Program-made: the position numbers and the translations under genes
DNA from: Haliotis rufescens
Taxonomy: Eukaryota
DNA: 64,000 nt
NCBI RefSeq assembly: GCF_023055435.1
Contig: NW_025964334.1
Coordinates: 46,190,001-46,254,000, forward strand
Direction of reading: 5' to 3'
Notes under the pieces: model-generated
Database searches by the model: none
What the model was told of the DNA's origin: nothing
The model's input: the letters and a program-made list of their open reading frames with translations, nothing else
Shown here: positions 4,218 to 60,519 of the stretch, piece by piece
How the letters are laid out: each line of letters starts with the position of its first letter
Position numbering within the stretch: position 1 is the first letter of the stretch

Positions 4218-4549
4218 CATGGACAATCCCTGCCTCCAGGCTAGACTGTCGTACATGGACAATCCCTGCCTCCAGGCTAGACTGTCGTACATGGACAATC
4301 CCTGCCTCCAGGCTAGACTGTCGTACATGGACAATCCCTGCCTCCGGGCTAGACTGTCGTACATGGACAATCCCTGCCTCCGGGCTAGACTGTCGTACAT
4401 GGACAATCCCTGCCTCCGGGCTAGACTGTCGTACATGGACAATCCCTGCCTCCGGGCTAGACTGTCGTACATGGACAATCCCTGCCTCCGGGCTAGACTG
4501 TCGTACATGGACAATCCCTGCCTCCAGGCTAGACTGTTGTACATGGACA
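4218..4549. repeat. 36-bp minisatellite, ~9 copies, starting directly after the helicase stop codon (3'UTR)
   Basis: Unit catggacaatccctgcctcc(a/g)ggctagactgtcgta. Confidence 0.95.
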
Positions 4550-5862
4550 TCACTCCTGCACACAATGCTCAGCAGCTTTCATCATGAACTGTTCCCGCCG
4601 AAGAATATTCTGGATCTTGTCTTTCTCATCACTGCTCTTACACAGGATGACAAAGTGGCTGTCCTTCTTCCTGGCCCGTCCCCGCATCTGTACAAGCGTG
4701 GTGACTGTGTTGGGCGGGTTCATGCAGACCACCAGCTCACACTCGGGGATATCCACGCCTTCCTCTGCTACAGATGTGGCTACGATGATGTTATACTTCT
4801 TGCTCTTCACTCCATCAAGCACCTTCTTCTGCTGCTTCACCTTCATGCCACCATCAGCCTGACCAGATCCATGGCCAACCACCGATGTGATCTTCAGACT
4901 GTTGGCTGATGCAAATTGTGTCTGCTTCAGGAAATTGCTCAGTCTGTGTGCATGTGCTCGCTCCCGGACGAGAATCAAGGCCATTGCATTTCTGCCAGCT
5001 TTCCAGTTGATGTATTTATCATTGGTGAGAGTAGTGAGTAACTGTGTGTACAGAGTGATATGAAGAGGGTTGTCATCAAACTCCTGCTGGACATGAGCTG
5101 AGTGAGCAGCTCTTCTCATGGCATCTTGCAGCTCTTCACACTGTATCCCCATCCCCTGAGCGTGCTGGAAGCCACTCTGTGCTGGAGTCTGGTCGAACGT
5201 CTTCAGGTCAGCTACAGCTGTGGGTATCCCAACAACATCCAAATCAGACAGCGCAATTAAAAGTATCTTGCAATGATTGACAAGGAAGTCCATATTCATT
5301 TTGACTTGTGGTTGCTGGGATTTGGCCTGGCAGTTCCCAAGAGCTCGGACAAACCTTTCAGTAGCAGCATTGTCCAATCGCTCTACCAAGTCTTCCAAGT
5401 CTTCTCCCTGCATCCTCTCCACTCCCCACTGACAGTCAGTGTCAATAGTGCACAACTCCGACAGCTTCAAGTAACACTGGTAAATGTACACCAACAGTGT
5501 CTTCCGGAAAGCTCTTTCTTCATCCGAAAACGGCTCATAGTTGATCTTCAGCTTAGCACTTGACTGATAGCGCTTCAGTTCTCCCACACAATCTCCCTGG
5601 ACGATGGCAATGCTGGCTCCCCCAAGGTTATGGAATAACTCGTGCAGCATGCTGACCGTGCTCTCTACACTGTCGCGCCCCGCAGGGGAGGCGGTCAGAC
5701 CTAGCACTTTGGGTCTGTGTTCTGGCTGGCATGGGCGGTGGTACGCCTCCAGGAGGCGATTGAAGGGGTGATTCTTGGCACAGTGATGAGCTTCATCAAA
5801 CACAACCAGTGAGAAGTCTTCCCAGCGCAGCTGCTGCTTCAGTAGTAGATTGTCAGCATAGG
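4550..5862 (-). CDS. Terminal exon of the ZF-helicase: Hel1 motifs II-III, insertion domain, Hel2 motifs IV-VI
   Basis: DEAHH, LGLTASP, ATSVAEEGVDIP and QMRGRAR; TAG acceptor at 5865-5863. Confidence 0.9.
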
Positions 5863-8800
5863 CTACAACACAGATATACAACAGATAGACTACAACAAGG
5901 ATATATAACACTGTTAGGTTACAACACAGATATAACACAGTTAGTCTACAACACGTATATATCACAGTCTACAACACAGATATATCACAGTTAGCCTGCA
6001 ACACAGATATATATCACAGTTAGCCCACAACACAGATATATCAGTTACCCCACAACACAGATATGTCACAGTTACCCTACAACACAGATATATCACAGTT
6101 AGCCCACAACACAGATATATCACAGTTAGCCCAGAACACAGATATATCACAGTTAGGCTACAACAAGTATATATAACACTGTTAGGTTACAACACAGATA
6201 TAACACAGTTAGTCTACAACACGTATATATCACAGTCTACAACACAGATATATCACAGTTAGCCTACAACACAGATATATATCACAGTTAGCCCACAACA
6301 CAGATATATCACAGTTAGGCTACAACACAGATATATCACAGTTAGGCTACAACACAGATATATATATCACAGATAGCCTACAGCACAGATATATCACAGT
6401 TAGCCCACAACACAGATATATCAGTTACCCCACAACACAGATATGTCACAGTTACCCTACAACACAGATATATCACAGTTAGCCCACAACACAGATATAT
6501 CACAGTTACCCTACAACACAGATATATCACAGTTACCCTACAACACAGATATATCACAGTTAGCCCACAACACAGATACATGTATATCACAGTTAGCCCA
6601 CAACACAGATATATCACAGTTAGGCTACAACACAGATATATCACAGTTAGGCTACAACACAGATATATCACAGTTAGCCTACAGCACAGATATATCAGTT
6701 ACCCCACAACACAGATACATGTATATCACAGTTAGCCCACAACACAGATATATCACAGTTACCCTACAACACAGATATATCACAGTTACCCTACAACACA
6801 GATATATCACAGTTAGCCCACAACACAGATACATGTATATCACAGTTAGGCTACAACACAGATATATCACAGTTAGGCTACAACACAGATATATCACAGT
6901 TAGGCTACAACACAGATATGTCACAGTTACCCTACAACACAGATATATCACAGTTAGCCCACAACACAGATATATCACAGTTACCCTACAACACAGATAT
7001 ATCACAGTTACCCTACAACACAGATATATCACAGTTAGCCCACAACACAGATACATGTATATCACAGTTAGCCCACAACACAGATATATCACAGTTACCC
7101 TACAACACAGATATATCACAGTTACCCTACAACACAGATATATCACAGTTAGCCCACAACACAGATACATGTATATCACAGTTAGGCTACAACACAGATA
7201 TATCACAGTTAGGCTACAACACAGATATATCACAGTTAGGCTACAACACAGATATGTCACAGTTACCCTACAACACAGATATATCACAGTTAGCCCACAA
7301 CACAGATATATCACAGTTACCCTACAACACAGATATATCACAGTTACCCTACAACACAGATATATCACAGTTAGCCCACAACACAGATACATGTATATCA
7401 CAGTTAGGCTACAACACAGATATATCACAGTTAGGCTACAACACAGATATATCACAGTTAGGCTACAACACAGATATATCATAGTTAGGCTACAACACAG
7501 ATATATCACAGTTAGGCTACAACACAGATATATCACAGTTAGGCTACAACAAGGATATATAACACTGTTAGGCTACAACACAGATATATCATAGTTAGGC
7601 TACAACACAGATATATCACAGTTAGGCTACAACACAGATATATCACAGTTAGGCTACAACACAGATATATCACAGTTAGGCTACAACACAGATATATCAC
7701 AGTTAGGCTACAACACAGATATATCACAGTTAGGCTACAACACAGATATATTACAGTTAGGCTACAACACAGATATATCACAGTTAGGCTACAACACAGA
7801 TATATCACAGTTAGGCTACAACAAGGATATATAACACTGTTAGGCTACAACACAGATATATCATAGTTAGGCTACAACACAGATATATCACAGTTAGGCT
7901 ACAACACAGATATATCACAGTTAGGCTACAACACAGATATATCATAGTTAGGCTACAACACAGATATATCACAGTTAGGCTACAACACAGATATATCACA
8001 GTTAGGCTACAACACAGATATATCATAGTTAGGCTACAACACAGATATATTACAGTTAGGCTACAACACAGATATATCACAGTTAGGCTACAACACAGAT
8101 ATATCACAGTTAGGCTACAACACAGATATATCACAGTTAGGCTACAACACAGATATATCATAGTTAGGCTACAACAAGGATATATAACACTGTTAGGTTA
8201 CAACACAGATATATATATCACAGATAGCCTACAGCACAGATATATCACAGTTAGCCCACAACACAGATATATCAGTTACCCCACAACACAGATATGTCAC
8301 AGTTACCCTACAACACAGATATATCACAGTTAGCCCACAACACAGATATATCACAGTTAGCCCACAACACAGATATATCACAGTTAGGCTACAACAAGGA
8401 TATATAACACTGTTAGGTTACAACACAGATATAACACAGTTAGTCTACAACACGTATATATCACAGTCTACAACACAGATATATCACAGTTAGCCTACAA
8501 CACAGATATATATCACAGTTAGCCCACAACACAGATATATCAGTTACCCCAAAACACAGATATGTCACAGTTACCCTACAACACAGATATATCACAGTTA
8601 GGCTACAACACAGATATATTACAGTTAGGCTACAACACAGATATATCACAGTTAGGCTACAACACAGATATATCACAGTTAGGCTACAACACAGATATAT
8701 CACAGTTAGGCTACAACACAGATATATCATAGTTAGGCTACAACACAGATATATTACAGTTAGGCTACAACACAGATATATCACAGTTAGGCTACAACAC

Positions 8801-11800
8801 AGATATATCACAGTTAGGCTACAACACAGATATATCACAGTTAGGCTACAACACAGATATATCATAGTTAGGCTACAACACAGATATATCACAGTTAGGC
8901 TACAACACAGATATATCACAGTTAGCCTACAACACAGATATATCACAGTTAGGCTACAACACAGATATATCACAGATAGCCTACAGCACAGATATATCAC
9001 AGTTAGCATAGGTTGATAAGTGTGAAGAAATAGGGGTTTTTAAAAGTTCAAAATTAACAATAGTCGACTAGTAAGTAGAAGGAGACTAGTCAAACTACAA
9101 AATAATTTCTAACACTCCATACATCAAAGAGTTATAGTAAAGTGTTTCCACTTAACAAGTGTGCAGCATGTACCTGCCGTGCTGACGATGACGTCATGCT
9201 TGTAGAGGGGCGTGGTGTCTGGAGGCAGTATGTTCCCACACAGTGTGGCTATCTTCAGCTCACGCTCCTGCTCCTCCCCATCACTTGTCATGCTGGAAGT
9301 AACATGGTATTCTACCATGAATTTGGGAAATACTCAATTCTGATTGGTCAATCAGAGGTATCAAATGACAATTACCACCTCTGATTGAAACGGCTGATTT
9401 TATCGACCACAAATAGTTAAGTACTTCTTTCTCAGTCAATGTCAGCAGGGATTTAAAATAATTATTTGTACAACTATAGCTTATAAAATGCAGGGGCCGT
9501 CGGGTAGCCTTGTGGTTAAAGCATTCGCTCGTCACGCCGAAGACCCGGGTTCGATAACCGACATGGGTACAATGTGTGAAGCACATTTCTGGTGTGCCTT
9601 GCCGTGATATTGCTCGAATATTGCTAAAAGCAGCGTAAAACCATACTCACTCACTCACTTATAAAATGCAGATTTGTGGTAACCACAACATTCAAAGTAT
9701 GTGTAGCAATACATTTTGTGCAGAAAACTCGATAGAAATTGAGAGAGTATCGTTCAGCTTGAAATTTGAGCTTTTCTATAGCTGACTGTGACATATTTTC
9801 TGCATCACAATGAGTGTGACGTCGTAATAGCGACATGGACTGTAGAACAAAACCTTGCAAGACTTGAGTACTCTTCTTTAAAGGTGCCCACTTCATGCTA
9901 ACTTATGTAATAACTGTGCTACACCCTTTTGATGCCTTTCGTATATGCAAATCCTTTTTGGTAAAATAATAATGTTGAAGAACATTAAGTACTAATATTT
10001 GTTTAAAGCAGGGTTAGAACTTAACACTAGCCTGCTAGCCTGGGGCTAGTACAAAGTGCTGTGGGCCAGAACAAATTTCCAAATTTCCACCTCGTTTTAC
10101 CCTTACAAGGGCATATTATCCTTACCTGGGCTAGTAATGCTTTGGAGTTCGGTTCTAACCCTGTAAAGCTGGTATCTGTTACCTCAAACATCAAATATTT
10201 TCTTTTCTGTAGTTACATTTTTTTACATCAAGTTGAAAAGTTGGCATTTGTTATTAAAAGTTTTGTGGTAAAGAGAAACAAGTCTATACCTTTTATGTAG
10301 CCATAGCAACCAGCAAACTAACAACTCTCAGTAGGAAAAGCATTTCAGTTTAGTTAACTGTCTGTGTTTTAGAGTCTACTGTCCCAAACTTTTCTGTCAA
10401 CATCATTTTCAGTACATTGTAATGTTAAAATAGCTAAGCTAAAGATGTTTTACTGAACTCAGGCATTTGACGAGTGGCTAACGCACAGGCGGATTTATGC
10501 TAACAAATTCTATTGCATTGACATGCTGGTACATGTGTACTTTCTAACCCTTAACATGACTTCAGCACTTCAAGCAGGTCTGTATTCTGTTTCTGGAGAT
10601 GTAAACAAAATCGGTAACAGAATTCTTGTGTGGCAATACTGGATTTTCTCCTCAGTTCACTGATCATGTGACAATGGGCATGCAAAAGAACAAAAAAGCT
10701 ACTGTAAAGCATCATTGTCAAGTATATCATGTTGACTTCTTGATAAGTATGCGAAGTCAACGTCCTCCGTGGGCCAGCAGGTTACTGACACAATGGGACT
10801 CAAGCAGGGTGCAGACAAACTGCACTATCTCCAGCGCATCTTCCTTCTACTACAGAATGGAGGCCATTTTGTAAGGATAGCATATCCTGTGTCACATGAT
10901 AGCAACAGGTACAATAGCGGGAGATTTCACTGACCGGAATATGGATGATAACCGATAATACATCAATGTCTGAAGTACCTTTACAATGTATACATTAACT
11001 CTGTTGGGCGTAATTCTGCATTTCTATATTTCAAAGTGCATTATTTCAAGTGGGAAGAAAGCTCCATATGAAGCAGGTAGTAGACGTTTACCCTCAAGCT
11101 TTGGTTACACACCAAAGACATTAATTAGGACAAATTATTGACAACAGCCAACAAATAGCTGGTCCTTGTATGGCTAGGGGACACAACTATTGAGGGTATC
11201 TTACGGCATCAACATTCTGGCAAAATATCATATAAGAAGATATAAGTGTCAGTGCATACTGTGACTTTTGTACACAGAAATATACAGAGACTACTTACCG
11301 CTTGTACTTCCGATTCCCAAGTTCATTGGTGATATACTTTGACTGCTGCAGCACCAACAACACCTTGTCCACCAGGAACAAAACTGGGCGCCGTGGGTTC
11401 CGTTGCAGCATACAGCTCAGCGTCATCACCGACACCAGCGTCTTCCCAGTCCCTGCAGCAGCAAACATGTCATGTTGCATCGTGACATCCGAGAGTATCC
11501 AATATCTTATAGCACGATTAATACTAAAACTAAAGAATGACAGTCTTCTCCTGATTGAAACAATCGTCGATATCACCAATAAATTCCCTCCCCATGTCTG
11601 TTAATGATCAGGCAAACATCTTTCAAGAAGGCTTGGCGGCACACAACGGCCGGGAGATATAACACACTGGACAGCTGATTAGGCCAGCATGGTAGTGCAG
11701 GTCTATCTTTAACATGTTTAAATTAGCATAGTCAAATATTTGTTTCCAATGCATTTGATACAGATACTGGAAAATGGGAATTAAACAGTTTTGCAGTATG

Positions 11801-14800
11801 AGATTTAAAGAAAACAGCAGTGTTAGAAACTTACATTTTTAGTCCACTAGTCCTTATAATGATAACATATAGCAAAACCCTTTAAAATGGCAAATTTCTA
11901 TTTATCCTTATGATGCCTTAATTATTGGGCAGTATGGGCAGTATGGCAAGGAGTACAGGACTAATAGTACCAATTTCTAATGCTGAAGCGTTGAACGAGA
12001 AAACCACTGACTCACCTGTTGGCAAGAAGATGACCTTGTCGCCTTCCATGGTTTTGCAGAACAGATCCACCTGGTAGCTGCGAGGCATGGTGTTGGTCAC
12101 ATGATAGGCTGCTTCCTCCGCATCATCGATACTGAGCACCCTCTGTATCTGTCCCAGGTTCACCCGGGGAGCCTCCACTTCCGCTGCCCGCTGTCGATGA
12201 GCTCGACTCTCCAGGTGAGCCTGGTAGTCTTTATCTGTGTTCATCGGCCGATTACAGATGTCACAGTAAAATTTGTAATATCCACTAAAAGGGTTCTTTG
12301 GTGGCACCTTTGGTATTGCACCTATACCAACATGGCCACTGAGCAGCTCAAAATTAGAGGATGGACAGATACTTGACTCAGCATCTGTCAGGAGAGACAT
12401 GTTTCTATCTTGTCTTGGAGCTATGGAATGGTTGTGATCAGTGGTACTGGAGCCCATAGAAACATGTGGTCCATCATTGAGAATACTGCTAGCATTTGTG
12501 TTGTAACTGATTAAACTGTCAGCCTCACCACCAGGCAGGTCATCATCCAATGGCAATGTCTTACTTCGAGTAGATTCTTCTTCATCTGAATCCAGGTTTT
12601 CAAACACATCAAGAGGAACTTTATTTCCTCTGTTTCGGACAGTGGTCTGGTTTTTTAGCGGGTTGTGAGTGTTGGGTCGCCTACTTCCACCTGATCCCTT
12701 GACATTATCTTGGAAGTCATCAGTGTCTCCAACGTCGGTACATGTCGGTTGAGTGATCGCTGCTGTTCTCATCCTCAGAGGCATCGCATCTGTTGTGGTA
12801 ATGGTTGGGTTGACAATGGTGGATCCCCTGCCCATGCCTAGTTTAGCTAATGTAGTGCTTTTGGGGATAACATTTCTTAAAGGAGTTATTTCTGTGTTAA
12901 TTCTGTTGTCCTTGGAATACGTTTCCTCGGCTGCAGCCGACATTCCTGGGCTTCGTTCTCGCTCCGTGCTAAGTGTTTTGCTGGCACTATTTGTACTTGA
13001 TAACTTTCTCACACCCAAACCAGCTTCACTCACTCTTGTAGACTGTCTCCCATCAGTATTAAGATGTTCCCAGGGTCCGACTAGATCGGAACTGACATTT
13101 GATGCTGTAGTGATAGGAACTCTCCTGGAAACTGAAGAGATTATTTCCTTCACTTCAGTATTTGGAGTTACGCCTTGGACTGCAGTGACTTCTCCTGTAC
13201 GAAGAGCTTCCCAGACATCCTTGTAGCTCCCCTGCTTGGATTCTGTCTTTTCCTGACTATCTTCAACACTAGACTCTCTGCTATTTTCATCACCATAAGC
13301 CGATAGAGCCACAGCGACATATCGCTGCTTCTTTTCCACAGTCTGTAGATGCTTGGGACTTTTCTTATGGATTGACAACTGTTCAAATGAGTTCACTTGG
13401 CACTGGCATACCTCACACACATAGATGTTTTGTGGGGAATGGCCTACCGAGTTCTGTCTGCCTGGTGAGTACAGGCCCCCAGCTTCTATCCCGACCTGAT
13501 CCAAGGAACCCTTGGTCAGCCCTGCCTTGCTTATATGTTTGGCAGAGGCATAATGCTGCGCAGCACTTTCTTGTCCACTGAATGACTTGAGACACACCTT
13601 ACACTGGAGTGACAGTATTCCATTCTGGTTGATCATCTTCCTCTTTTCCTCAGCCCTGGCGTGACTCCGACCCTGAAGGTGCTGGGTGGCGTGCTGTGGA
13701 GATGTGAGCTCTATGTTACAAACAAAGCATCGCCCTCTTCCACCAGTAAACACATACGCTGGCTCCTCCATCGCATCACCAGGCTGGGACACTCCAGAAG
13801 AAGGGTCTCTATGTGCATCAACTGCATCAACCAAATTCAATCTCTGTACAGCCTTTTCATGTGGTTTCCCGGCTAAGTGTTGACTAGCATGTGCCTTAGA
13901 GGTAAGTTCAATGTTACACACATTGCAGAAGCCTCTCATTCCATTGAACTCGTAAAGCCTTCGTTCTGCAGACTCCTTTGATTCCTCATGTCTGTTTGTT
14001 GCTTGCCATCGTGCTAAAGCATTTGTGTGATTCTTACCGTTGAGATGCTGTTGTGCATGTTGAGAAGACGTTAGTTCGATGCTGCAGACGTTACACCATC
14101 CTCTGTTGCCATCAAACCGATATGGTGGATGAGGACTGGTAGATGGTTTGACACCAGCTGTTCTCTCACTGACATCAGGACCATTGTTGACCAAAACATC
14201 ACCAGTACCTGCTGAATGCAAGCCTTTAGCTTTTGCATGCTTCTTACCACTGAGGTGTTGGTTCGCATGTTCACGAGACGTCAGTTCAATTTTGCAGATG
14301 TTACATCGTCCAGTGCTCTCATAAAAAATATATTCCTGTTCTTCTGTTACGTTTTCTTGAGACAAAGGAGTTCTTTGCATTTGTGTATTCTCTGATGAAT
14401 TGTTAGAATTATTACGATCAGTAATGTCGGGGACATGTTGATTGACCATGTTTAGATTTTGTAGACATGAATAGCTACCCAGAATTGGAACATCTGTCAA
14501 AGTTCCTCCATGAACAGATAAACACAGACTACCTTCATTCTGATTACTTACAGTCTGTGGCAAATAGCCTGTTGGCCCAGCTGAATATGTCAGTTTGTTT
14601 TCGGTGGGAAGCATAATTTGAGCTAAACTTGGAGCTTTTGGAAACTGACTCACTTTGGGTTCTGTCAAAGAATTAGACTCCAGCTGGATGTTCATTGGCA
14701 GGCAGGTCTGAACGGTAGCACCTGGAGCTGCAAGTGGGTTATTTACCAAGGTCATTTTCTGGGAAAGCTGCGGTTTCTCCTGCTCCTGAAGTGTGAAATT

Positions 14801-15961
14801 TGTTGTGGGCAGCTGTGACCTCTTCTTGTGTCTATCACTGTCAAAGTGTTGTTGGGCACTCTCAGGGCCGGAGAATACAACATTACACAAGTCACATTTG
14901 AGCACCTCACTGGCAGATTGTCCAAATTTCCATTGCTTCTCTGCTTTCTTATGTCGGGATCCATCAAGATGTTGCTGGGCATTTTGAGGAGATGTAAAAT
15001 CCACATGACAGACATTGCAGTAACCCTCCTTTCCACTGAAAGTATAAGGAACATTGTATTCATTACCATCACCAGAACTAGTTTTCACAGTATCAGATAC
15101 TAACATGTTTCCAACTAGAGTAGAACTAGTTGTCAGTAATGGTGCCATTGTTTGACTTGGTCTAGTTTCAGGCATAGAACTACTGTTGCTGTAAACTGGG
15201 ACATCAGCAAACAGTCCAGTACCTGTCTCTGAGGGGGGTATTCCCAACCTTGTAGGGGCGTTACTTGGCTGTGAGATGTTTGAAACACCATACAGGGGAG
15301 AGCTACTGTTGAAAACATTGTCCTGTCCCTCCATCTCTCTCTTCTTCTTCAAGTGCTTTGCACTTGCAAGATGTTCCTGAGCATTGCCAAGACTGGTAAA
15401 TGGTACATTGCAAATCTGACACTTCAACACATTGGTGTTGTCCTCTCCAGCCTCCATCTGTTTTTGTTTCTTCTGATGTTTGGATCCACTGAGATGTTGC
15501 CGGGCATGTTGTGGAGAGGTCAAGTCAATGTCACAGAGATGGCAATAACCTCTAGAACCATTAAAGTCATATTCCTTTCTCGCGGTTTCACTGGACATCT
15601 TGAAAGGTACTGTCTGGTTAAGCCCCTGTGTGGGACTGCTACCAACATGCTGTACCCTCCCAGAAAGGAGAAGGTTTTGAACTGGTGTTGCAGCTTGGTA
15701 TGCGAAACCTAAACTTCTTCTTACAGTCTCTGTGTGTCTAGGGCTGACAATGTGTTGTTGAAACTGTTCAGCTGTGTTACATTGGACATTGCATGGCTCA
15801 CACCAGTATGGTCTTGTGTTTCCCTGAAACACGGAATTTTTAATCTGGTCTTCTTTTTTCCTGTGCGCTTCACTGATGAAATGCTGCTGAGCTGGTAAAG
15901 CACCACTAAATTGCTTTGAACAAATAACACAGTAAAGTGGAACAACTTGTTGGCTGCTCAT
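4550..15961 (-). CDS. Multi-zinc-finger RIG-I/Dicer-family (RLR-like) DExH-box helicase, ~1843 aa, 4 coding exons
   Basis: Exons 15961-12016, 11452-11299, 9292-9174 and 5862-4550 join in frame through GT-AG introns (phases 1,2,1; 5532 nt). Exon 1 encodes 13 C-x2-C-x12-H-x5-H fingers, then a Q motif (PRSYQ). Walker A LPTG|TGKT is split by intron 1. Further motifs: Ia LFLVDK, DVIVST, motif II VVFDEAHH followed by NHPFN, III LGLTASP, V IIVATSVAEEGVDIPEC, VI QMRGRAR. TGA stop at 4552-4550. Confidence 0.9.
5861..9007. repeat. 27-bp minisatellite, roughly 115 units, filling most of helicase intron 3
   Basis: Unit ggctacaacacagatatatcacagtta, with variants ccctac, gcccac and gcctac and a 33-bp acatgt-insertion variant. 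Confidence 0.97.
9493..9658 (+). mobile_element. tRNA-derived SINE with (TCAC)n tail and 14-bp TSD
   Basis: A-box-like gtagccttgtggttaaagc, B-box ggttcgata, tail actcactcactcac; cttataaaatgcag at both 9480-9493 and 9658-9671. Confidence 0.8.
10009..10163. mobile_element. Short hAT-like MITE
   Basis: 12-bp perfect TIR cagggttagaac / gttctaaccctg; taaag on both flanks. Confidence 0.5.
11818..11985. mobile_element. hAT-like MITE; second copy at ~42079-42237 in inverted orientation
   Basis: cagtgttagaaa ... tttctaatgctg ends; shared core ttttagtccactagtccttataatgataacatatag. Confidence 0.55.
12016..15961 (-). CDS. Exon 1 of the ZF-helicase: 13 matrin/U1-type C2H2 zinc fingers plus start of the helicase
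   Basis: Uninterrupted ORF with repeated CxxC...QH(L/F)xxxxHxK fingers; GTGAG donor at 12015-12011. Confidence 0.92.
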
Positions 15962-16991: not shown

Positions 16992-19900
16992 ATGGCCGCC
17001 AGTGAAAAGGTAAGAGCGGAGCATATGTGTGAAATGCAGATATTTTGCTGGAGACACACGATATTTTGACATTTTCATTTATGTCAGCAACTTTTGGACC
17101 CAACATTTTATAAGAAATTCCTCTTTATCATAGTAATATCATTGGGACAGTTTAGATGGCAGTACATCATTAGGCCTAATATCCATAAACAAAATATTGA
17201 AATGAATGAAAAGGTAAGCTTGGTGATAGCATAGTTTATCAAACAAATGTGTATTTACCGTTCTGTCATTCTGTAGACCTGTTGGCTATTAGTCTTGATC
17301 ATCCGAACCTAATGGCTCTAGCATTCATTACATCTTGTTTATTGATTGTTGATTGTGCATGTAGAATATATGTTGCTGACTAGATGATCCACTTTTTTCA
17401 ACAGGTTTTGAAACAGCTCTTAAGCAATAGAAGGATCAGAAAAGATAAAGATGTAGAAGAGCTCTACCTTTCTGACAAGTGAGATTAATTATTTTCAAAG
17501 ATGCAGAATGGGATTTGCACTGAGAATGTATTTTGTATATGACCCTGTTTTTTTCTTTACTTTGTCTGCCCCTGCCCTTTATAATTACCCTTAGTATCTA
17601 TTATCCAACATAAGAATTAAAAGAGTCTTAAATACCCTTATGCCTCCATTTCACTTCGACCACGAATATCCCAAAACAACCTGAACAGGAAAAGTTTTAT
17701 GTTCGTAGATAAACCTCAATCATTTCTTGAAGTTCTTAAATGAATCTTATTTTTTTCCCAAACATTTGTACAGTTTGCGGGAGTTTGTCGAATCGGGTCC
17801 CCAAATTGCAATTTCGTGGCTGTATCGTAATCCATTCGTAATTAATTCTTATGTTCCGTAACAGCTTTGTAATTGATTCTTTTGCATTCTTGGCTATTCT
17901 TAGCTATTCATGGCTCCCAAAATGTCTTGTCCTCAAACCGAAAACATCCCGAAACAGCCATGAATGTCCCGAGTCAACTACAAATCATGCAAGAATTAAG
18001 TAAGAACAACATTCGGCATATTTGTAACTTAGTCGTAGGTGATTCTTACAATTCGTGCATGATCCGTACATGAATCTTGTAATTCATACATGTTTCTTAA
18101 CCCATTCCTGGCATTCTTCATATTTTTCAACCCGATTAGCCAGAAAGTTTGCATTATTAGCCAATTCATCACGAATTTCAAAAGTTTCCGATTCAGGGTT
18201 ATTCGGGATATTCGTGGTCATAGTGAAAGGGGGGAATGACCCAATATACAACTCGGCTTATGCATCACTGTATTATACTGTCTGCAACCTAGCATGTTTG
18301 TGCATGGCTGATAAATAACAGTGTCAAAATATGAATAATAATGTAATTAAATTAAACAAAGTTACCTGGTAAGACTTCCACGCGTATCCCCCCCCTAAAA
18401 AATATATATGATTAAAAGGAATTAGTGGCAATGCATACATATATTACTTTTGGAGGGGGATACAGGCTTAAGTCTTTACAAAACTATATCTTTATTTATG
18501 AATATGAAAGTAATTTCAATCTGAAATATTTATATATTGTGTTGCAAATCTCTGCCTCTCTGGCCTGATGGACCTGCATAGTGGCAACTTAATCTGTGAG
18601 GACATCCTTAAACATGATTAAACTGATCTTCCATTTGTGCAATTGGCAAAACAAACTTGTAAGAAGGGACTCAGATGACATTGGACTGTCTCTGTGGTCT
18701 AGTGTAGAGCGTCCTTTAGTCCATACATGATATTGTTTTATGGTGTAAGATACCAAGTGATTTCCTGCATGTTAACGATGATCTTATCCAAGGAACTGTG
18801 TATATACCACCAGAGCAAAGTAGATTTCATTCACCGGAAATTTTTACAACACTAGAAAATTATATCATTCGTATGTCAAACTGCTAACAGTACATGTGTA
18901 TTGTTGGTGATATGAATTGTCATACTAAAAATCTACCGGATTTTATCATTTTGGACGAATATTTATGTGACAATGATATTATTGACGAGGAATTATTGTT
19001 TTCAAATGTACAACTTCTAGTGTAAAGTTATATAGAATATCAATGTATACTGAAACAAACTGTAACGGGTATAAACTCCTGGATTTATGTAAAAATAACG
19101 GATTGTATATTGTAAATGGGAAATTAGGCAAAGACAAGGGTATTGGTAAACTGACATGCAGAAATGCCAGTGTTGTCGATTATTGTATTGTATCAGCAGA
19201 AACATTCCCATTATTAATAGATTTTGAGGTGCAGGAGTTTGACCCGATCTCGTCCGATGTACACTGTGGCTTATCGTTAACGTTAGATTGTACAGCATAA
19301 CAACTGTCTCCAGTTGTAGATGATGACAAAGATGTACTTGTACATAAAGTTGTAAAAAGATGGGTTCCTGATAAAAGTGAAACATTTTTATGTAATATCG
19401 ATAAGGTTGCCATTACCCATCAGTTTACAGAATTAGATGCATGTAAAGACCAAATAGAGCCAGATGACATTAACCAAATTGTAAATAAACTCTCTCAGAC
19501 GCTGGTTACTGCGGCTGAAAAAACTCTAGGTACTGTAAAAAATTCTAGACACTCTGTACATAAGCACAAGCATAAACCCTGGTTTGATGAAAAATGTAAA
19601 TCATCACGTAGATTTTACCACAAGCGTAAACGTATATAAGGAAGGACTAAAGACAGTAATATCAAAGCTATGTACATTTCAGCAAGTAAGAATATTTGGG
19701 AAATTTTAAAATCATTTGAACCAAAGAAAACAGCAGAAAAAATCAGTATGGACAAATTTTTAGAATTTTTTAAAGATCTTAATCAAAGTTCTGATGATAA
19801 TGACAATGTTTTTGCCAATAACATAAACAAGTATTTGTCACAAAGTGACGAAATGTCCCCCGCCTGTATATACACCATAGTACCAAATATGAAGACAATC

Positions 19901-22900
19901 CAGCGATTAGTTCTTGAGATATTGCGGCAACACCGTTTTCCAACTCCAAAAACAGATTTGCCTGCTGTGACCTTGAAAATGGGGTCAAGGTCACCAAAAC
20001 CGACTGGTGTATGCGATGTCTGTATATACACCATAGTTCCAAATATGAAGACAATCCAGTGTTTAGTTCTTGAGATATCGCGGCAACAACGTTTTCCAAC
20101 TCCAAAAGCAGATTTGCCTGCTGTGACCTTGAAAATGGGGTCAAGGTCACCAAAACCGACTGGTGTCTGCGGAGTCTGTATATACACCATAGTTCCAAAT
20201 ATGAAGACAATCCAGTGTTTAGTTCTTGAGATATCGCGGCAACATCGTTTTACAACTCCAAAAGCAGATTTGCCTGCTGTGACCTTGAAAATGGGGTCAA
20301 GGTCACCAAAACCGACTGGTGTCTGCGGAATTTGTATATACACCATAGTTCCAAATATGAAGACAATCCAGTGTTTAGTTCTTGAGATATCGCGGCAACA
20401 AACAGGTGGGACGTACGGACGTATGGACGTACGTACGGATGGTCGTGAATACTATATCCCCGCTTCGCGCTTTCGCGCGGCGGGGGACAATTATGATAAT
20501 CATGATGATATTTTAGATTGTAGGATTACAGAAGAAGAAATTATGTCAGCGGTCCGTGCATTGAAGAACAATAAGGCTTGTGGGTTGGATGGTATTTACG
20601 ATGAGCATTAAAAGCTCAATTCATGTCATGCCGGTTTACGTAAGGCTTTTTAACCTCGTTTTGACAAAGGAGTTTAACCTGAAGCTTGGCTTGTTGGCAA
20701 AATAAAACCAATCTACAAAAACAAAGGAAACCAAGCTGACCCAGACAATTACAGAGGCATTCTATCCTAAGCTGTTTAGGTAAATTGTTCACTACACTAT
20801 TGAATAATCGTTTACAAGCTTACTCAGTTCAGACTAATCTAATAAGCGAAGCGCAAGCAGGAGTAAGCTTTCGATACAGTATGGAGGTGTGGTCTGTGGA
20901 CAAAAATGATAAAGTCTAATATCAAAGCAAAATGTTTTAATGTCATATATAATATGTATCAAAATATCAAATCTTGTGTTTCACATAATAACAAGGTGTC
21001 AGGTTTCTTCCCATGTCAAATTGGTGTAAGACAAGGTGAAAATTTGTCACCTTTCCTGTTTGCTTTGTACCTTAATGACCTTGAACAATGATTTTGAAGG
21101 ACTGCATAATGTAATAACCTTTTAATAGATTCACTTGAACTGTACATAAAACTTTTTCTCCTTTTGTATGCCGATGATACTGTTTTAATGGCCGAAAGCC
21201 CAGAAGATTTAAGAAAGTGTCTCACTATATTTGAAGAATATTGCACTATCTGGAAACTTAAAGTCAATCTTGACAAAACGAAAGTTGTTATTTTTGCCAA
21301 GCGCTCCACAAATAGAGTCTTCAATTTTATGTTAAATGCCTCGATTCTTCATGTTGTTAAAGAATATGTTTACCTTGGTATTTTATTTACAAACACTGGT
21401 AGATTTTGTAAGGCCCTAAAAAGACTGACAGATCAAGCATCTAGAGCAATGTACGCTGTATTTCATAAAATTAGAATATTAGAAATTCCTATTGACTCTC
21501 AATTGAAATTATTTGATCAACTTGTTCAGCCAGTATTGTTATATGGATCCGAGGTGTGGGGTTTTGAAAATGCTGTTGTCATTGAACGTGTACATCTTAA
21601 ATTTTGTAAATATATTCTCAAGTTAAAACAGTCAACACCCGATTACATGGTATATGGTGAACTAGGGAGGTATCCTCTCAGCATTTTCATCAAGATAAGA
21701 ATGATTTAATATTGGTGCAAGCTAACATCATCACAAACTAGCCTTTCTAGTATAGTATATAAACTTATGTTTCAAATGTCCATTGCAAATCCAGATTACC
21801 ATTTCCCACTATTAAAAGAAGTAAAATGCATTCTTCAAAATATAGGCTTTAATTACATTTGGTTGTCTCAAACCTTTATTAGTGCCGCATGGTTGAAACA
21901 AAATGTGAAATGTGATAATTTTCTGCAAAGATGGCGAGAATCAAAGGAAAATTAATCTAAAGGTTACTATTAAAACATGTTTAAGGAGTTACCATCCCTA
22001 GAACCTTATTTACTAGAACTACCAATCACCTTACGCATCTCTTGCTCGTTTTAGAACAGCAAATCATAGATTACCCATTGAAACAGGAAGATGGTATAAT
22101 ATTGTAAGAGAGGAAAGAAAATGTACATTGTGTAAAAATTTGATATGTGATGAAATGCACTTTTTATTAGAATGTCCAAAACTCTCAGAAATTAGAAACA
22201 AGTTTTTGCTTCAATACTACTGTATGTATCCTTCTGCCTTCTGCGGATATTGACTTGGTGCTTACTACAAATAACTAAATATTTGAAAGTTTTCTCAAGT
22301 TTTAGTTACATACCTCTATGATAATGAAGGATAAAATTTTGAACTTATTATCAATGACAATGTAGTTGTTTTGTTTTATTTGCAAACATCAGTTAGCGCT
22401 TGTCTGCAGATTTTGTTTGTTTGTTAAACGCCGCACTCAGCAATATTCCAGCAATATGACTGCAGTCTGTAAATAATCAAGCCTGGACCCGACAATCCAG
22501 TGACTGACATGAGCATCGATCCATGCAATTGGGATACAATGATATGCATCAACCAAGTCCGCGAGCCTGACCAACCAATCCCATTAGTCGCCTCTTACGA
22601 CAAGTATAGCCGCCTTTTATGGTAAGCAAGGGTTTCTGAAGACCTATTCTATCCCGGATCTTCACATCTGCAGAAATTATGACATGTAAACATGAGCAGA
22701 TATAGGGTCCTTGCAGACTTTGCTGACGCAGCTGTAACACAAATAATTGATCAGTTGCAAGGTATATATAACTTACTATATAGTACATAAAGATAGGAAC
22801 GTCATTATCTAATAAAAAACATACATTAATGTTTTTGCAAGGAATTTATCTTCCAATACTGAACAAGAAATGAATATACTCAAACCTCAGGTGTTTTCTC

Positions 22901-37214: not shown

Positions 37215-40200
37215 ATGGTTTATCTTGTAAGGTTGGAGCAAAAAGTCGAAAGTTTTGCATTGCAAACACGACTGATCATCTTATTTTTTCAGGTGAGTAG
37301 ATTTCTTTCATCCGCATGCACTTTCCTAAAGGATATTACCCATATTTAGTTGTGTTTTGTTGGATAGCAGGTGCTCACTTTGACCGGTGAATGAAGCCCC
37401 AGTACAATCCTGAACATGAACTACCTGTAGAAGTTGTCCTGCCGGGACTGACCATGCACTATGTGTAACATTTCGATATAGTTGACCATGAACTGTTGGA
37501 CCTTCACAGAAACTAAATATCAAAACAGTACTTTGATATCAATAAATATGTATGTGTCTTTTGAAACAATAAGTGTATTCATTCTAGAATAATGATTATT
37601 TTTGTAACCTTTTTTAGGATGGTTCAAAGATGTACATCTTTGGTTGGTTCAGTCACTGGACCATGTAACTAATATTCTATGCCAACAAACTCGCAGACAA
37701 GAAATGTATTCTATCTTTCAGGTGATCTTCAATGCTGTTATTCCTGACCATGATGCTGAAGTGTTCAACCCTCCAACATCCCCAACCCACAACCAGACAG
37801 CAGTGGACAGTATCTTGGACATCGGAGTGGGTGGACTCCGAAGATGGGATGCAGTGTACTTCATCCATGTTGCGGAGCATGGTTACATCTATGAGAATGC
37901 TGTAGCATTCTTCCCCCTATACCCAGTCATGGTGGGAAAAATCGCCGATGTTTTCTACTGCTTCTCATTTGCAGGTCAGATCATGTCCAAGTTAAACCTC
38001 TGCTTAATCATTGGCGTGGCGCTGAATGTCTACTTCTTCACAAAGGCAGCATCAACGCTGTTTCACTTGGGAGTCCAGGTTCTCAAAGATGAGAGATTAG
38101 CATACAAGGCAGCTTTGTTGTTCTGCATCACCCCAGCCAGCATCTTCATGACAGCTCCCTACTCCGAATGTCTTTTTACCTACCTCTTCTTCTCCGGACT
38201 CCTGGCTTTTGCCAGTGGTGACACAATGAAGGCAGCATTTTGGTTTGGACTAAGTGGAACTACACGGTCAAATGGCCTTGTAGCAATCGGGTTCATCTTG
38301 TTCAGGAGAGCTAAGGGGTTTATGTCCAGTATGCAACAAGCGACAAAAGCGAGATTTGAAACCATGATCGAAAAGGGGATGATGATGGCGTCAATGACAC
38401 ATCTGTATCTGACACCAGCCATTGTTGCGGTTGTGTTATGTGCTGGCCCGTTCTGTTTGTATCAATATTACATTTACAGAATATTCTGTTTGTCAAATGA
38501 TGCAGATTTACCAAATCACCTTGTTCGCTATGGCCGCTCCCAGAACTACAAGCTTGTGAGTGATGCTCCATCCCCATGGTGTTCACAGTTACTTCCCTTG
38601 TCCTACAGCTACATCCAGAAGCACCACTGGGGTGTGGGCTTTCTCCAGTACTATGAGCTGAAGCAGGTCCCCAACTTCTTGCTTGCCACCCCCATGCTGG
38701 TGCTGAGTGTGTGTGCATGCGTGTACTACTACAGGCTCAACACAGACTGCTGCCACAGACTCGGCATGGTACAGGAGGGACAGACCGACAAGAAGACAGA
38801 CTTACAGAAAGGAAACTTTGGCTTCAAGAACACCAGACTTTTCATCTATGTTGGTCATCTAGTGTTCATGACTGTCTTTGGAATTTTCTTTGTACACATT
38901 CAGGTGAGGTTTTTTAGGAATCTATTAATGCTCCTTGCATAGTATACATACATCTTTGCACCAAGAAATATGATCATTCCCATCAAAATCGGTGTCCATG
39001 GATTATTATCTCTGTGGCGTTGTTCATACCTGTTTGTTGTATCTACAACATGTACAAGCATGAAGCAAATTAAAATATTACCACCAAAAGATTTTATTAA
39101 GATTTCAAGCTAACTGCCTATGGAAAGGAAATGTGTAAAAGAATTTTTGTCAGTTCTTATATTCTTATAATGGGGTATTCTGACATTACATAAATCTAGA
39201 ATACTAAATGAGCCCCCGTGTAATACCAATTTCATGAAACGAGTGAATAGTTCTGGTATCTGACGAGCGAAAGCGAGTCAGATACCATAACTATTCACGA
39301 GTTTCATAAAATTGGATTTACACGGGAGCGAGTTTAGTATTTTATTTATTACTGGCCATTTATAACGTATTTAGAATTATACTGTTGAGTGTGAATAGGC
39401 TAACACCTACACGATCCACGGCATAATCCAACTGAGTTTAACACAGGTATACTTCAAATACGTCAAAAGTTGAAACGTATGAATTTAATACCATCCAACG
39501 GTCCACCTTTAGAATTCAGGCGTCCGTTCCACAAAATTATCGTAGCGTTAAGGTTATCGCAAATCATATACTTTAACTTAGACCAACGACTGTCGTCGCG
39601 CTACCGTACGATCGCTTTGTGGAACGGGGCCTTGCACCTCAAAGTTTACAATCACGTCACAATACCCGATGACGTAATTTGTGGAATTTTGTTGCAAGAT
39701 CCTTCGGTGAAACAATGCCATGTGACGTCAACCTAGCAACAAGGTTGCTGGGGTCATTCAGTGTGCATAAGCTCCTCTCAGTGATCTATCATCTCCACAC
39801 GCAATGTCGTTGAATAAGCGAAGGGATGTTGAGAGCTTTTAATATTTGTTCGTGAAACGTGTTCCGAGAGTACATAAGCACACGTTTTGGTATTACACAA
39901 TGTGTAATACATCTGTATGTTTATTAAACGGGTGATCTCTTCACGGGCAAGTAATAAATAGAGGATATTATATGAGTGTTCATATCATACTATGTTTAAG
40001 ACACAAGTGTCTGAATACCGGAAATTAAGCACGAGTGTCGTAAACATAGTATGACATGAACTCGAATATAATTTTCTATTTATTACCAAAGAAGATGTCT
40101 ACATACAGAGACAAATTATAGTGTTTACCTATAAGGACAGCAAGTCGCAACAGCAGTGGAAACACAATTTGTCAAATGACGTCAACAATCTCCATCTATC

Positions 40201-60486: not shown

Positions 60487-60519
60487 ATGAAACATTCACT
60501 TCCTCACCAATCTTGTGGC

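What the first reader, a model, noticed from the sequence alone, without database searches (positions are those of the whole stretch)
4550..15961. Candidate new dsRNA sensor architecture: 13 JAZ/matrin-type zinc fingers fused to a CARD-less, CTD-less RIG-I/Dicer-family helicase
Seen: four exons splice in frame into ~1843 aa, with 13 widely spaced C-x2-C-x12-H-x5-H fingers followed by a complete SF2 helicase (PRSYQ, LPTGTGKT, DEAHH-x3-NHPF, LGLTASP, ATSVAEEGVDIPEC, QMRGRAR). The protein ends about 40 aa after motif VI. Known: these motifs are typical of the RLR/Dicer/FANCM clade, and HPF/Y after motif II and GLTASP point to RLR/Dicer. RIG-I and MDA5 signal through N-terminal CARDs and bind RNA through a C-terminal Zn domain; Dicer has PAZ and RNase III domains. 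None of these is present here. Spaced fingers of this type bind dsRNA or RNA:DNA hybrids in ZNF346/JAZ, ZMAT3/Wig-1 and ZNF385. Inference: the finger array replaces the CTD as a multivalent reader of long dsRNA, feeding an ATP-driven helicase. It could act as an invertebrate antiviral or RNA-silencing effector, or as an LGP2-like regulator. The ORF track hides the fusion by splitting it into four unrelated pieces.
Basis: partly seen in the sequence, partly recalled or inferred. Interest (0 to 1): 0.92.

Follow-up and report, generated by a model that had tools for sequence, protein, structure and literature searches.

The report
Abalone zinc-finger Dicer-like helicase
Red abalone has a real, single-copy gene that joins 13 double-stranded-RNA-type zinc fingers to a Dicer/RIG-I-type motor with no other domain, and it belongs to an old animal family, from sponges to acorn worms, for which I found no published study.

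Summary
Four minus-strand exons with GT/AG borders encode 1843 aa. The product has 13 C-x2-C-x12-H-x5-H fingers and a complete Hel1-Hel2i-Hel2 helicase, and it ends 39 aa after motif VI. The four exon translations match RefSeq XP_046367586.2 exactly (Haliotis rufescens LOC124142913, 'uncharacterized protein'). The model is therefore already in databases, but the protein is unstudied.

There is no CARD, RIG-I CTD, PAZ or RNase III domain, and the short C-terminus is conserved in every full-length relative. The helicase is not an RLR. It belongs to a well-supported clade of finger-bearing helicases found in sponges, corals, hemichordates, crinoids, a brachiopod, a nemertean, a flatworm and molluscs. 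Its nearest kin are amoebozoan dsRBD-helicases (Dictyostelium HelF, an RNAi suppressor) and helicase-RdRP fusions. Dicer comes next, and RLRs branch outside.

Most likely it is a dsRNA-tethered, ATP-driven motor that works on dsRNA or RNA-silencing substrates through partners. A CARD-type signalling sensor is less likely.

The scan's index lists only this same stretch, with no follow-up. I rate it a new variant of a known kind, interest about 0.6.

The parts
12016..15961 (-). Exon 1: start ATG at 15961, 13 zinc fingers, long Ser/Thr-rich linker, Q motif, first half of motif I (LPTG)
   Evidence: One open frame of 1315 aa. GT donor at 12015-12014. Exact match to P0294 residues 1-1315.
15734..15931 (-). 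Zinc fingers 1 and 2 (15863-15931, 15734-15802)
   Evidence: C-x2-C-x12-H-x5-H pattern. Pfam zf-met.
15353..15544 (-). Zinc fingers 3 and 4 (15476-15544, 15353-15421), a pair 18 aa apart
   Evidence: Pfam zf-met and zf-C2H2_2.
14828..15019 (-). Zinc fingers 5 and 6 (14951-15019, 14828-14896), a pair 18 aa apart
   Evidence: Finger 5 aligns to ZNF346/JAZ 2mkd.
13349..14305 (-). Zinc fingers 7 to 12 (14237-14305, 14027-14095, 13859-13927, 13661-13729, 13535-13603, 13349-13417)
   Evidence: Fingers 8 and 9 with their linker align to the two fingers of Xenopus dsRBP-ZFa 1zu1.
12266..13348 (-). Linker of 361 aa between fingers 12 and 13, rich in Ser and Thr
   Evidence: Composition. 70% identical between H. 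rufescens and H. asinina, against 91% for the finger cores.
12197..12265 (-). Zinc finger 13, which ends 37 aa before the Q motif; a finger at this position is kept across the family
   Evidence: Best zf-C2H2_jaz stretch, residues 1230-1256. Family alignment consensus.
12071..12085 (-). Q motif PRSYQ
   Evidence: Y and Q are invariant in the family alignment.
11299..11452 (-). Exon 2: second half of motif I (G-TGKT, completed across the intron) and motif Ia (VLFLVDK, 11364-11384)
   Evidence: AG acceptor at 11454-11453 and GT donor at 11298-11297. Pfam ResIII. Exact match to P0294 residues 1317-1366.
9174..9292 (-). Exon 3: Hel1 strand and loop that ends in VIVSTA
   Evidence: AG acceptor at 9294-9293 and GT donor at 9173-9172. 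Exact match to P0294 residues 1368-1406.
4550..5862 (-). Exon 4: motif II DEAHH (5783-5797), NHPF (5762-5773), motif III LGLTASP (5684-5704), Hel2i (about 5012-5524), motif V (4739-4780), motif VI QMRGRAR (4670-4690), C-terminal helix (about 4556-4633), stop TGA (4550-4552)
   Evidence: AG acceptor at 5864-5863. Motif coordinates. Pfam Helicase_C. PDB matches. Domain limits mapped from the model of P0196.
5859..9006 (-). Minisatellite that fills most of intron 3: 27-bp unit, about 115 copies, running up to the exon 4 acceptor
   Evidence: Tandem Repeats Finder; sequence at the acceptor.
4218..4549 (-). 36-bp tandem repeat, 9.2 copies, that begins right after the stop codon (presumed 3' UTR)

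Best explanation
This is Haliotis rufescens LOC124142913, a single-copy gene. Its 1843-aa protein has three parts. The first is an array of 13 dsRBP-ZFa/JAZ-type zinc fingers on flexible linkers. The second is a Dicer/RLR-type duplex-RNA-activated SF2 ATPase (Hel1-Hel2i-Hel2) with all ATPase motifs intact. The third is a single C-terminal pincer-like helix, and there is nothing else. It belongs to an old, vertically inherited metazoan family of finger-bearing helicases. The nearest relatives of that family are amoebozoan dsRBD-helicases (HelF) and the helicase modules of protist RdRPs. RLRs are more distant.

Inferred mechanism: the fingers hold the protein on long A-form duplex RNA, independent of sequence and with avidity. 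The helicase then clamps the duplex and uses ATP to move along it, proofread it or remodel it. With no nuclease and no death-fold domain, the output must pass through partners such as Dicer, Argonaute or ADAR-type machinery, or consist of clearing or handing over dsRNA. That would make it a modulator or cofactor of RNA silencing and dsRNA handling, possibly antiviral, and not a CARD-type signalling receptor.

Shown here: gene structure, domains, fold, clade and conservation. Inferred: RNA binding, ATPase activity and pathway.
For: - Gene model: splice sites; exact identity to RefSeq P0294; the same junctions and end in two other Haliotis species.
- Fingers: 13 regular fingers; Pfam zf-met and jaz; best solved relatives are the dsRNA binders ZFa and ZNF346. 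Finger cores are 91% identical between H. rufescens and H. asinina, linkers 69% and the helicase 84%.
- Helicase: phmmer against PDB gives ancestral Dicer helicase 7e-28, RIG-I, LGP2 and MDA5 about 1e-22, and FANCM 7e-13. The AF2 model of the H. rubra helicase has pLDDT 88.5 and shows Hel1, a helical insert, Hel2 and one terminal helix. Foldseek aligns about 580 columns to RIG-I, MDA5, LGP2, ancestral Dicer helicase, DRH-1 and DCL4.
- Clade: finger-helicases 100/100; with HelF-like 81/53; with helicase-RdRP 96/95; with Dicer 90/61; RLR apart 95/90; archaeal Hef root 100/100.
- Domain logic in kin: Z-alpha plus finger plus helicase in corals, and 1 to 4 dsRBDs plus helicase in Amoebozoa. Every front module seen is a duplex reader.
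- The short tail of 39-56 aa is conserved in nearly all full-length members.
- HelF knock-out cells are hypersensitive to RNAi (PMC2175303). HelF is dsRBD plus helicase, 837 aa (PMC4894637).
- The abalone genome has at least 9 canonical RLR CTD loci elsewhere, and abalone lack MAVS (PMC11103948). This gene is therefore an extra helicase type and not the species' RLR.
Against: - There is no biochemical, expression or localisation data for any member.
- Fingers of this type can also bind RNA:DNA hybrids.
- The sister relation to HelF is weakly supported (81/53), and HelF's own mechanism is poorly known.
- Gastropods lack RdRP (one search was blank; preprint 10.64898/2026.07.10.737666 cites Pinzon 2019). 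Any RdRP-linked role therefore cannot apply here.
- Transcript evidence from this species could not be obtained.
Confidence: 0.55

Rival explanations
1. It is a true pattern-recognition receptor of the RLR kind. The finger array stands in for the CTD as the ligand reader, and activation is passed to an unknown, non-CARD adaptor that switches on an antiviral transcription programme.
For: The fold and motifs match RLRs as well as they match Dicer. NCBI's pipeline names some members 'RIG-I-like' or 'DHX58-like'. Lophotrochozoan RLRs are known for swapping domains (PMC8998645). A planarian RIG-I without CARDs is reported to signal, as cited in PMC11103948. Corals add a Z-alpha domain, which is known from immune sensors.
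Against: The helicase is not in the CTD-bearing RLR clade, and forcing that union is disfavoured (AU p 0.034). No signalling or oligomerisation domain is detected even at E<=1. The gene is single-copy and inherited much as the species tree predicts. It does not show the tandem expansion of this genome's CTD-bearing RLR loci. Abalone lack MAVS (PMC11103948).
Confidence: 0.17
2. It is a nuclear RNA-processing or R-loop factor. The fingers read RNA:DNA hybrids or structured nuclear RNA, and the motor resolves them. It would serve genome maintenance or RNA maturation and not defence or silencing.
For: JAZ/ZFa-type fingers are reported to bind RNA:DNA hybrids as well as dsRNA, and JAZ is nuclear (established knowledge, not tested here). 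The wider helicase superclade includes the DNA-branch translocases Hef and FANCM. The title of Popova 2006, cited in PMC2175303, calls HelF a nuclear suppressor. Single-copy, slow, vertical evolution suits a housekeeping role.
Against: The helicase is separated from Hef/FANCM by a 100/100 branch and scores much closer to the dsRNA-dependent Dicer and RLR helicases. Related front modules (dsRBD, Z-alpha) are RNA-duplex readers. The family appears to be lost in vertebrates, insects and nematodes: none appears among the named hits. That is unusual for a core housekeeping factor.
Confidence: 0.18
3. It is a gene-model artefact: two neighbouring genes (a finger protein and a helicase) wrongly read as one, or a truncated model that lacks 3' exons.
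For: No RNA reads from this species could be examined. Many finger-only and helicase-only entries exist in databases.
Against: The 13th finger, the Q motif and half of motif I share one uninterrupted exon. Independent gene models give the same architecture in more than 20 species of 8 phyla, including transcriptome-derived complete ORFs in the sponges Oscarella and Sycon. The end position is conserved in all full-length relatives. No CTD exon lies on this contig. The helicase-only and finger-only entries have the sizes expected of single large exons or partial contigs.
Confidence: 0.03

Closest known systems
Dictyostelium discoideum HelF (dsRBD + Dicer-like helicase, 837 aa) and its amoebozoan relatives
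   Same: Layout: an N-terminal duplex-RNA reader followed by a Dicer/RLR-type helicase, with no nuclease. It is the nearest named helicase clade in the tree (81/53; 96/95 once RdRP-fused helicases are included). Identity is 37-38% across Hel1 and Hel2, with shared signature stretches. HelF has a genetic link to RNAi: knock-out cells are hypersensitive (PMC2175303).
   Different: HelF-type proteins use 1 to 4 dsRBDs, not zinc fingers, and have a longer tail (130-152 aa) after motif VI. They are found in Amoebozoa, not animals. The sister relation is only weakly supported.
RIG-I-like receptors (RIG-I, MDA5, LGP2, C. elegans DRH-1)
   Same: Hel1-Hel2i-Hel2 fold. Motif II followed by x-K-N-H-P-F/Y, motif III TAS, and a first pincer helix. 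Foldseek E 1e-26 to 1e-23 over about 580 columns.
   Different: No RIG-I_C-RD zinc domain, no CARDs and only one pincer helix. Outside the CTD-bearing clade. The abalone genome has at least 9 separate canonical CTD loci.
Dicer helicase domain (animal and plant Dicers; reconstructed ancestral Dicer helicase, PDB 9mw6)
   Same: Best sequence match among solved structures (7e-28). The tree groups the finger-helicase/HelF/RdRP clade with Dicers (90/61). An exclusive union with Dicers is not rejected (AU p 0.118).
   Different: No Dicer dimerisation domain, PAZ, RNase III or dsRBD. It does not lie inside the Dicer clade, which is closed at 100/100.
dsRBP-ZFa / ZNF346 (JAZ) / ZMAT-type dsRNA-binding zinc-finger proteins
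   Same: Finger pattern C-x2-C-x12-H-x5-H. Widely spaced fingers on long linkers. Pfam zf-met and zf-C2H2_jaz. Two fingers plus their linker align to ZFa.
   Different: Those proteins are finger-only. Here the array is fused to an ATP-driven motor, and at 13 fingers it is longer than the 2-13 seen across the family.
Helicase-RdRP fusions of protists (for example Plasmopara RdRP1)
   Same: The helicase module belongs to the same 96/95 clade.
   Different: Those carry a C-terminal eukaryotic RdRP. Abalone shows no RdRP match, and this protein ends after the helicase.

Membership tests
RIG-I-like receptors (RLR) | SF2 helicase core with a Hel2i insertion between Hel1 and Hel2 | tested here: met
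   The AF2 model shows a helical insert of about 170 aa. Foldseek aligns about 580 columns to RIG-I, MDA5 and LGP2.
RIG-I-like receptors (RLR) | C-terminal zinc-binding regulatory domain (Pfam RIG-I_C-RD, PF11648) | tested here: not met
   No hit even at E<=1 on the whole protein. The protein ends 39 aa after motif VI. All 9 CTD matches in the genome are on other contigs.
RIG-I-like receptors (RLR) | The helicase groups within the CTD-bearing RLR clade | tested here: not met
   RLR clade 95/90 excludes it. A forced union gives AU p 0.034, with the caveat that the constrained searches were stopped early.
RIG-I-like receptors (RLR) | N-terminal CARD or other death-fold signalling module (RIG-I and MDA5 types) | tested here: not met
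   Pfam finds only zinc fingers upstream of the helicase.
Dicer | Dicer dimerisation domain, PAZ and two RNase III domains after the helicase | tested here: not met
   None detected. The RNase III signature is absent from all family members.
Dicer | The helicase lies inside the Dicer helicase clade | tested here: not met
   The Dicer clade closes at 100/100 without it. A sister-level link is 90/61, and an exclusive union is not rejected at p 0.118.
FANCM / Hef / Mph1 | The helicase groups with Hef/FANCM; ERCC4-type nuclease or FANCM-specific domains follow it | tested here: not met
   A 100/100 branch separates archaeal Hef from all Dicer/RLR-type helicases, including this one. FANCM scores 7e-13, against 7e-28 to 1e-22 for Dicer and RLRs. 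No ERCC4 domain. Only archaeal Hef-like sequences were in the tree; no eukaryotic FANCM was included.
HelF-type dsRBD-helicases (Amoebozoa) | N-terminal dsRBD (Pfam dsrm) before the helicase | tested here: not met
   No dsrm hit; zinc fingers take that position.
HelF-type dsRBD-helicases (Amoebozoa) | The helicase is sister to, or lies within, the HelF clade | tested here: inconclusive
   Sister position at 81/53. The wider clade that adds helicase-RdRP fusions is 96/95.
dsRBP-ZFa / JAZ (zf-met, U1-like) dsRNA-binding zinc fingers | C-x2-C-x12-H-x5-H fingers that score above the Pfam cut-offs for zf-met and zf-C2H2_jaz | tested here: met
   13 fingers with exact spacing. zf-met 226-232 bits and jaz 150-156 bits. 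Best PDB matches are ZFa and ZNF346.
dsRBP-ZFa / JAZ (zf-met, U1-like) dsRNA-binding zinc fingers | Binding of A-form dsRNA or RNA:DNA hybrids | not testable with these tools
   Needs a gel-shift or pull-down with recombinant fingers.
Metazoan zinc-finger DRA helicases (the clade defined here) | At least one zf-met finger directly before the Q motif, a Dicer/RLR-type helicase, and an end 39-56 aa after motif VI; monophyletic helicase | tested here: met
   Clade support 98* with 34 rows and 100/100 with 15 rows. Fingers and tails counted. Alignment consensus.

The most novel reading that the evidence does not exclude
The finger-helicases are a third, pan-metazoan branch of the Dicer/RLR helicase superfamily, alongside Dicer and the RLRs. 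The branch was present in the animal ancestor and was later lost in vertebrates, insects and nematodes, which would explain why it has never been studied. It would act as a free-standing reader and motor for long dsRNA that gates what enters RNA silencing or editing. In this reading it is the animal counterpart of Dictyostelium HelF, with zinc fingers (plus Z-alpha in corals) as the ligand-capture module.
Probability: 0.4. Interest if true: 0.8.

Novelty: new variant of a known kind. Interest (0 to 1): 0.62.

Why it matters
Work on animal dsRNA sensing and RNA silencing rests on two helicase lineages, Dicer and the RLRs, studied in vertebrates, flies and worms. This gene shows that many other animals keep a further conserved lineage, from sponges and corals to molluscs and hemichordates. 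That lineage pairs the same kind of motor with a different duplex reader and has no nuclease or signalling domain.

If it modulates RNAi or antiviral responses, it would change how immune and silencing repertoires are read in molluscs. That includes farmed abalone and oysters, which suffer herpesvirus losses and, in abalone, lack MAVS. It would also give a handle on how RNA-reading modules were swapped onto this motor during evolution.

It is directly testable, because several member species allow RNAi or transgenesis.

Tried and rejected
No read-level check of junctions or the 3' end was possible, and I did not try other routes.
- Spliced protein. I searched them one by one by reference and used the public RefSeq protein P0294, which equals the four translations.
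- RdRP co-occurrence. PF05183 gave no match in the genome, and the control rang nowhere, so the blank is weak. A preprint states that gastropods lost RdRP. I dropped an RdRP-cofactor role for abalone.
- Dicer_dimer (PF03368) search of the genome was blank and uninformative.
- The 99-row careful tree did not finish; the quick tree was used. treekit's AU test made no progress. I ran IQ-TREE by hand under LG+F+G4. The searches were cut at about 20-30 iterations, so the AU values are approximate.
- Literature. Nine searches found no description of the family. They covered domain names, locus and accession numbers, and surveys of RLRs and RNAi genes in molluscs. The lophotrochozoan RLR survey traced RLR phylogeny through the RIG-I_C-RD domain and reports no zinc-finger N-terminal type, so it does not list this gene (PMC8998645). 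The original HelF paper (PMC1360742) is not held.
- Rejected readings: FANCM-like; hidden 3' CTD exons; a paralogue family in abalone, because the gene is single-copy.

Full report
**1. Observation**

The minus strand between 15961 and 4550 carries four exons.
- Exon 1 (15961-12016) is a single open frame of 1315 aa starting at an ATG.
- Its donor is G|GTGAG at 12016/12015. Exon 2 follows an AG at 11454-11453 and runs 11452-11299.
- Exon 3 is 9292-9174.
- Exon 4 follows an AG at 5864-5863 and runs 5862-4550, with the stop TGA at 4552-4550.
- The three split codons read G, R and A.

Exon 1 holds 13 fingers, each exactly C-x2-C-x12-H-x5-H. It then holds the Q motif PRSYQ and LPTG, the first half of motif I. 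Fingers and helicase are therefore joined within one exon, whatever the splicing.

Pfam scores, searched exon by exon:
- zf-met 1e-70 and zf-C2H2_jaz 1e-46 on exon 1.
- ResIII on exon 2.
- Helicase_C 1e-17, with weaker DEAD/ResIII hits, on exon 4.

Instead I found that the public RefSeq protein P0294 contains the four exon translations exactly and in order, with G, R and A between them, and ends at the same residue. P0294 is XP_046367586.2, 'uncharacterized protein LOC124142913', Haliotis rufescens, 1843 aa. Orthologues in H. cracherodii (96% identical to exon 1) and H. asinina (74%) have the same junction residues and the same C-terminus. The gene is single-copy in this genome.

**2. What is present and what is absent**

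On the whole protein, Pfam at E<=1 finds only C2H2/U1-like zinc-finger families, ResIII/DEAD and Helicase_C. It finds no CARD, death-fold, RIG-I_C-RD, Dicer_dimer, PAZ, RNase III or dsRBD. The protein ends 39 aa after motif VI.

That short end is not a truncation.
- All 11 full-length mollusc orthologues in the first search end 39-50 aa after motif VI.
- Nearly all family representatives end 41-56 aa after it.
- The genome has at least 9 exons that encode the RIG-I C-terminal domain. All are on other contigs (C24, C57, C190, C290), and three of them sit beside weak helicase matches on C190.

Abalone therefore has ordinary RLRs as well, and no CTD lies downstream of this gene.

**3. The fingers**

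The best solved relatives are Xenopus dsRBP-ZFa (1zu1; two fingers plus their linker align, E 4e-5) and human ZNF346/JAZ (2mkd). Both are dsRNA-binding finger proteins.

Two finger flavours occur. One has a Y/F-x-F-x-G-x-x-G lead and an L-T-S core (fingers 3, 5, 7-10). The other has an F-S/T-G/S core (fingers 1, 4, 6, 11). They form close pairs 18-19 aa apart (3/4, 5/6, 10/11). A 361-aa Ser/Thr-rich linker separates finger 12 from finger 13. Finger 13 ends 37 aa before the Q motif, and a finger at that position is conserved across the family.

Between H. rufescens and H. asinina, the finger cores are 90.6% identical, the linkers 69% and the helicase 84%. The fingers are the most constrained part.

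**4. The helicase**

phmmer of exon 4 against PDB sequences gives:
- the reconstructed ancestral Dicer helicase, 7e-28;
- RIG-I, LGP2 and MDA5, about 1e-22;
- plant DCL4, 1e-21;
- archaeal Hef, 3e-20;
- FANCM, 7e-13.

The tail after motif VI aligns with the start of the RIG-I pincer.

An AlphaFold2 model of P0196, built with a 46-row family alignment, has mean pLDDT 88.5 and pTM 0.81. P0196 is a 603-aa helicase-only public model from H. rubra, 84% identical to H. cracherodii and 90% to H. asinina over the helicase. The model shows two RecA-like domains, an all-helical insert of about 170 aa, and one long terminal helix. Foldseek aligns about 580 columns to RIG-I, MDA5, LGP2, ancestral Dicer helicase, DRH-1 and DCL4, with E 1e-26 to 1e-22. 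Motifs Q, I, Ia, II, III, V and VI are intact.

**5. Relatives**

A profile-free search of 1.84 billion representatives with exon 4 found 74 at E<1e-30. These match the whole exon, including Hel2i, always at the protein's C-terminus, and carry zinc fingers whenever the N-terminus is present.

Named members:
- gastropods: Haliotis, Lottia, Batillaria, Biomphalaria, Physella, Plakobranchus, Candidula, Babylonia, Nucella;
- bivalves: Sinanodonta, Potamilus, Mercenaria, Mactra, Argopecten, Ylistrum, Saccostrea, Mytilus, Pinctada;
- cephalopods: Octopus, Argonauta;
- a brachiopod (Lingula), a nemertean (Lineus) and a flatworm (Macrostomum);
- hemichordates (Ptychodera, Glandiceps) and crinoids (Anneissia, Antedon);
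- corals (Montipora, Oculina);
- sponges (Oscarella, Sycon, Corticium).

Their database names are inconsistent: 'uncharacterized', 'dicer-like protein 1', 'Dicer 2-1', 'DCL2-like', 'RIG-I-like', 'DHX58-like'. The Oscarella entry is a transcriptome ORF marked complete, and the Sycon entry also comes from the EukProt set; both contain fingers and helicase in one ORF. No vertebrate, insect or nematode member appeared among the named hits. This is not a formal absence test.

Finger number ranges from 2-6 in sponges, corals, crinoids and hemichordates to 8-13 in bivalves and gastropods. Coral members add a Z-alpha domain in front of the finger.

**6. Phylogeny**

I cut helicase cores by phmmer envelopes and built three trees:
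- a 134-row FastTree;
- a 99-row IQ-TREE quick tree under LG+C20+F+G4 PMSF;
- a 50-row careful tree.

Groups were labelled by domain content. In the careful tree, rooted on archaeal Hef (100/100):
- the finger-helicases are one clade (100/100) whose internal order broadly follows the animal tree;
- they join the amoebozoan dsRBD-helicases (81/53);
- together these join the helicase-RdRP fusions (96/95);
- that clade joins the Dicers (90/61);
- the CTD-bearing RLRs form a separate clade (95/90).

I ran an AU test by hand under LG+F+G4. The constrained searches were stopped early, so the values are approximate. An exclusive finger-helicase plus RLR clade is disfavoured (delta lnL 16.8, p 0.034). 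An exclusive clade with Dicers is not rejected (p 0.118).

The Dictyostelium member P0220 (844 aa, dsRBD plus helicase) fits the published description of HelF (837 aa; dsRBD 2-76, helicase 228-687) (PMC4894637). It is 37-38% identical to the abalone helicase over Hel1 and Hel2. helF knock-out cells are hypersensitive to RNAi (PMC2175303). The title of the original paper, cited there, calls HelF a nuclear suppressor of RNAi.

**7. Mechanism**

Shown here: a real, conserved, single-copy gene; a constrained array of dsRNA-type fingers; an intact Dicer/RLR-type ATPase; no nuclease or signalling domain; and membership of a distinct old clade whose relatives all place a duplex-RNA reader (fingers, Z-alpha or dsRBD) in front of the same motor.

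Inferred: the fingers tether the protein to long duplex RNA with avidity, and the helicase clamps the duplex and spends ATP to translocate or remodel. The effect is then exerted through partners or by clearing or handing over dsRNA. That makes it most likely a modulator or cofactor of RNA silencing and dsRNA handling, as in HelF, possibly with antiviral use.

An RdRP-linked role does not fit abalone. No RdRP was found (a weak blank), and gastropods are reported to have lost RdRP (preprint 10.64898/2026.07.10.737666, citing Pinzon 2019).

The RLR-type sensor reading remains possible, but it lacks any output domain and abalone lack MAVS (PMC11103948). A nuclear RNA:DNA-hybrid role is a second rival.

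**8. Novelty**

The lophotrochozoan RLR survey traced RLR phylogeny through the RIG-I_C-RD domain. It reports CARD, Death, DED, IG, SAM and CASc N-termini and no zinc fingers (PMC8998645). Abalone, Aplysia and snail immune or RNAi surveys do not mention this gene. Searches by domain names and by locus or accession numbers found nothing.

The architecture is therefore public as sequence but, as far as this library shows, undescribed and uncharacterised. I class it as a new variant of a known kind, the Dicer/RLR duplex-RNA-activated ATPases.

**9. Limits**

- No RNA reads were available.
- Reference sequences in the trees were labelled by domain content, not by curated names.
- No eukaryotic FANCM was included in the trees.
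- The AU test is approximate.
- Loss of the family in some phyla is inferred only from hit lists.

Noticed in passing
window 5859-9006: Intron 3 is almost filled by a 27-bp minisatellite of about 115 copies (88% matches). Each unit carries a TGTTGTAG-like polypyrimidine-AG string, and the array runs straight into the real exon 4 acceptor at 5864-5863. Many look-alike acceptors therefore sit upstream of the one in use.
   Followed up: partly
window 4218-4549: A 36-bp tandem repeat (9.2 copies, 98% matches) starts right after the stop codon, in the presumed 3' UTR. It produces long spurious ORFs on both strands.
   Followed up: partly
G000 contigs C190 (2.26-2.37 Mb), C57 (15.76-16.04 Mb and 10.55 Mb), C24, C290: At least 9 exons encode the RIG-I C-terminal domain. 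They include a three-gene tandem group on C190 and another on C57, so canonical RLRs are expanded in red abalone. One copy (C290) has an in-frame stop.
   Followed up: no
window 37644-38942 (+) and 19670-20611 (+): Neighbouring open frames match PIG-V mannosyltransferase (1e-83) and, weakly, the AP-5 beta-1 barrel. These are ordinary housekeeping neighbours with no immune-gene clustering around the helicase gene.
   Followed up: partly
proteins P0075, P0200, P0213, P0215, P0216, P0218 (corals such as Montipora; several are unnamed contigs): Coral members of the same helicase family carry a Z-alpha (Z-RNA/Z-DNA binding) domain in front of the zinc finger. I have not seen this domain combination described.
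   Followed up: partly
protein P0070 (1093 aa, unnamed ENA contig): A protein with two complete Dicer/RLR-type helicase modules in tandem. The first module has a Pfam RIG-I_C (Hel2i) match.
   Followed up: no
window 60000-64000: G+C rises to 53-60% with a strong negative GC skew, unlike the rest of the window (35-45%). I did not examine it.
   Followed up: no
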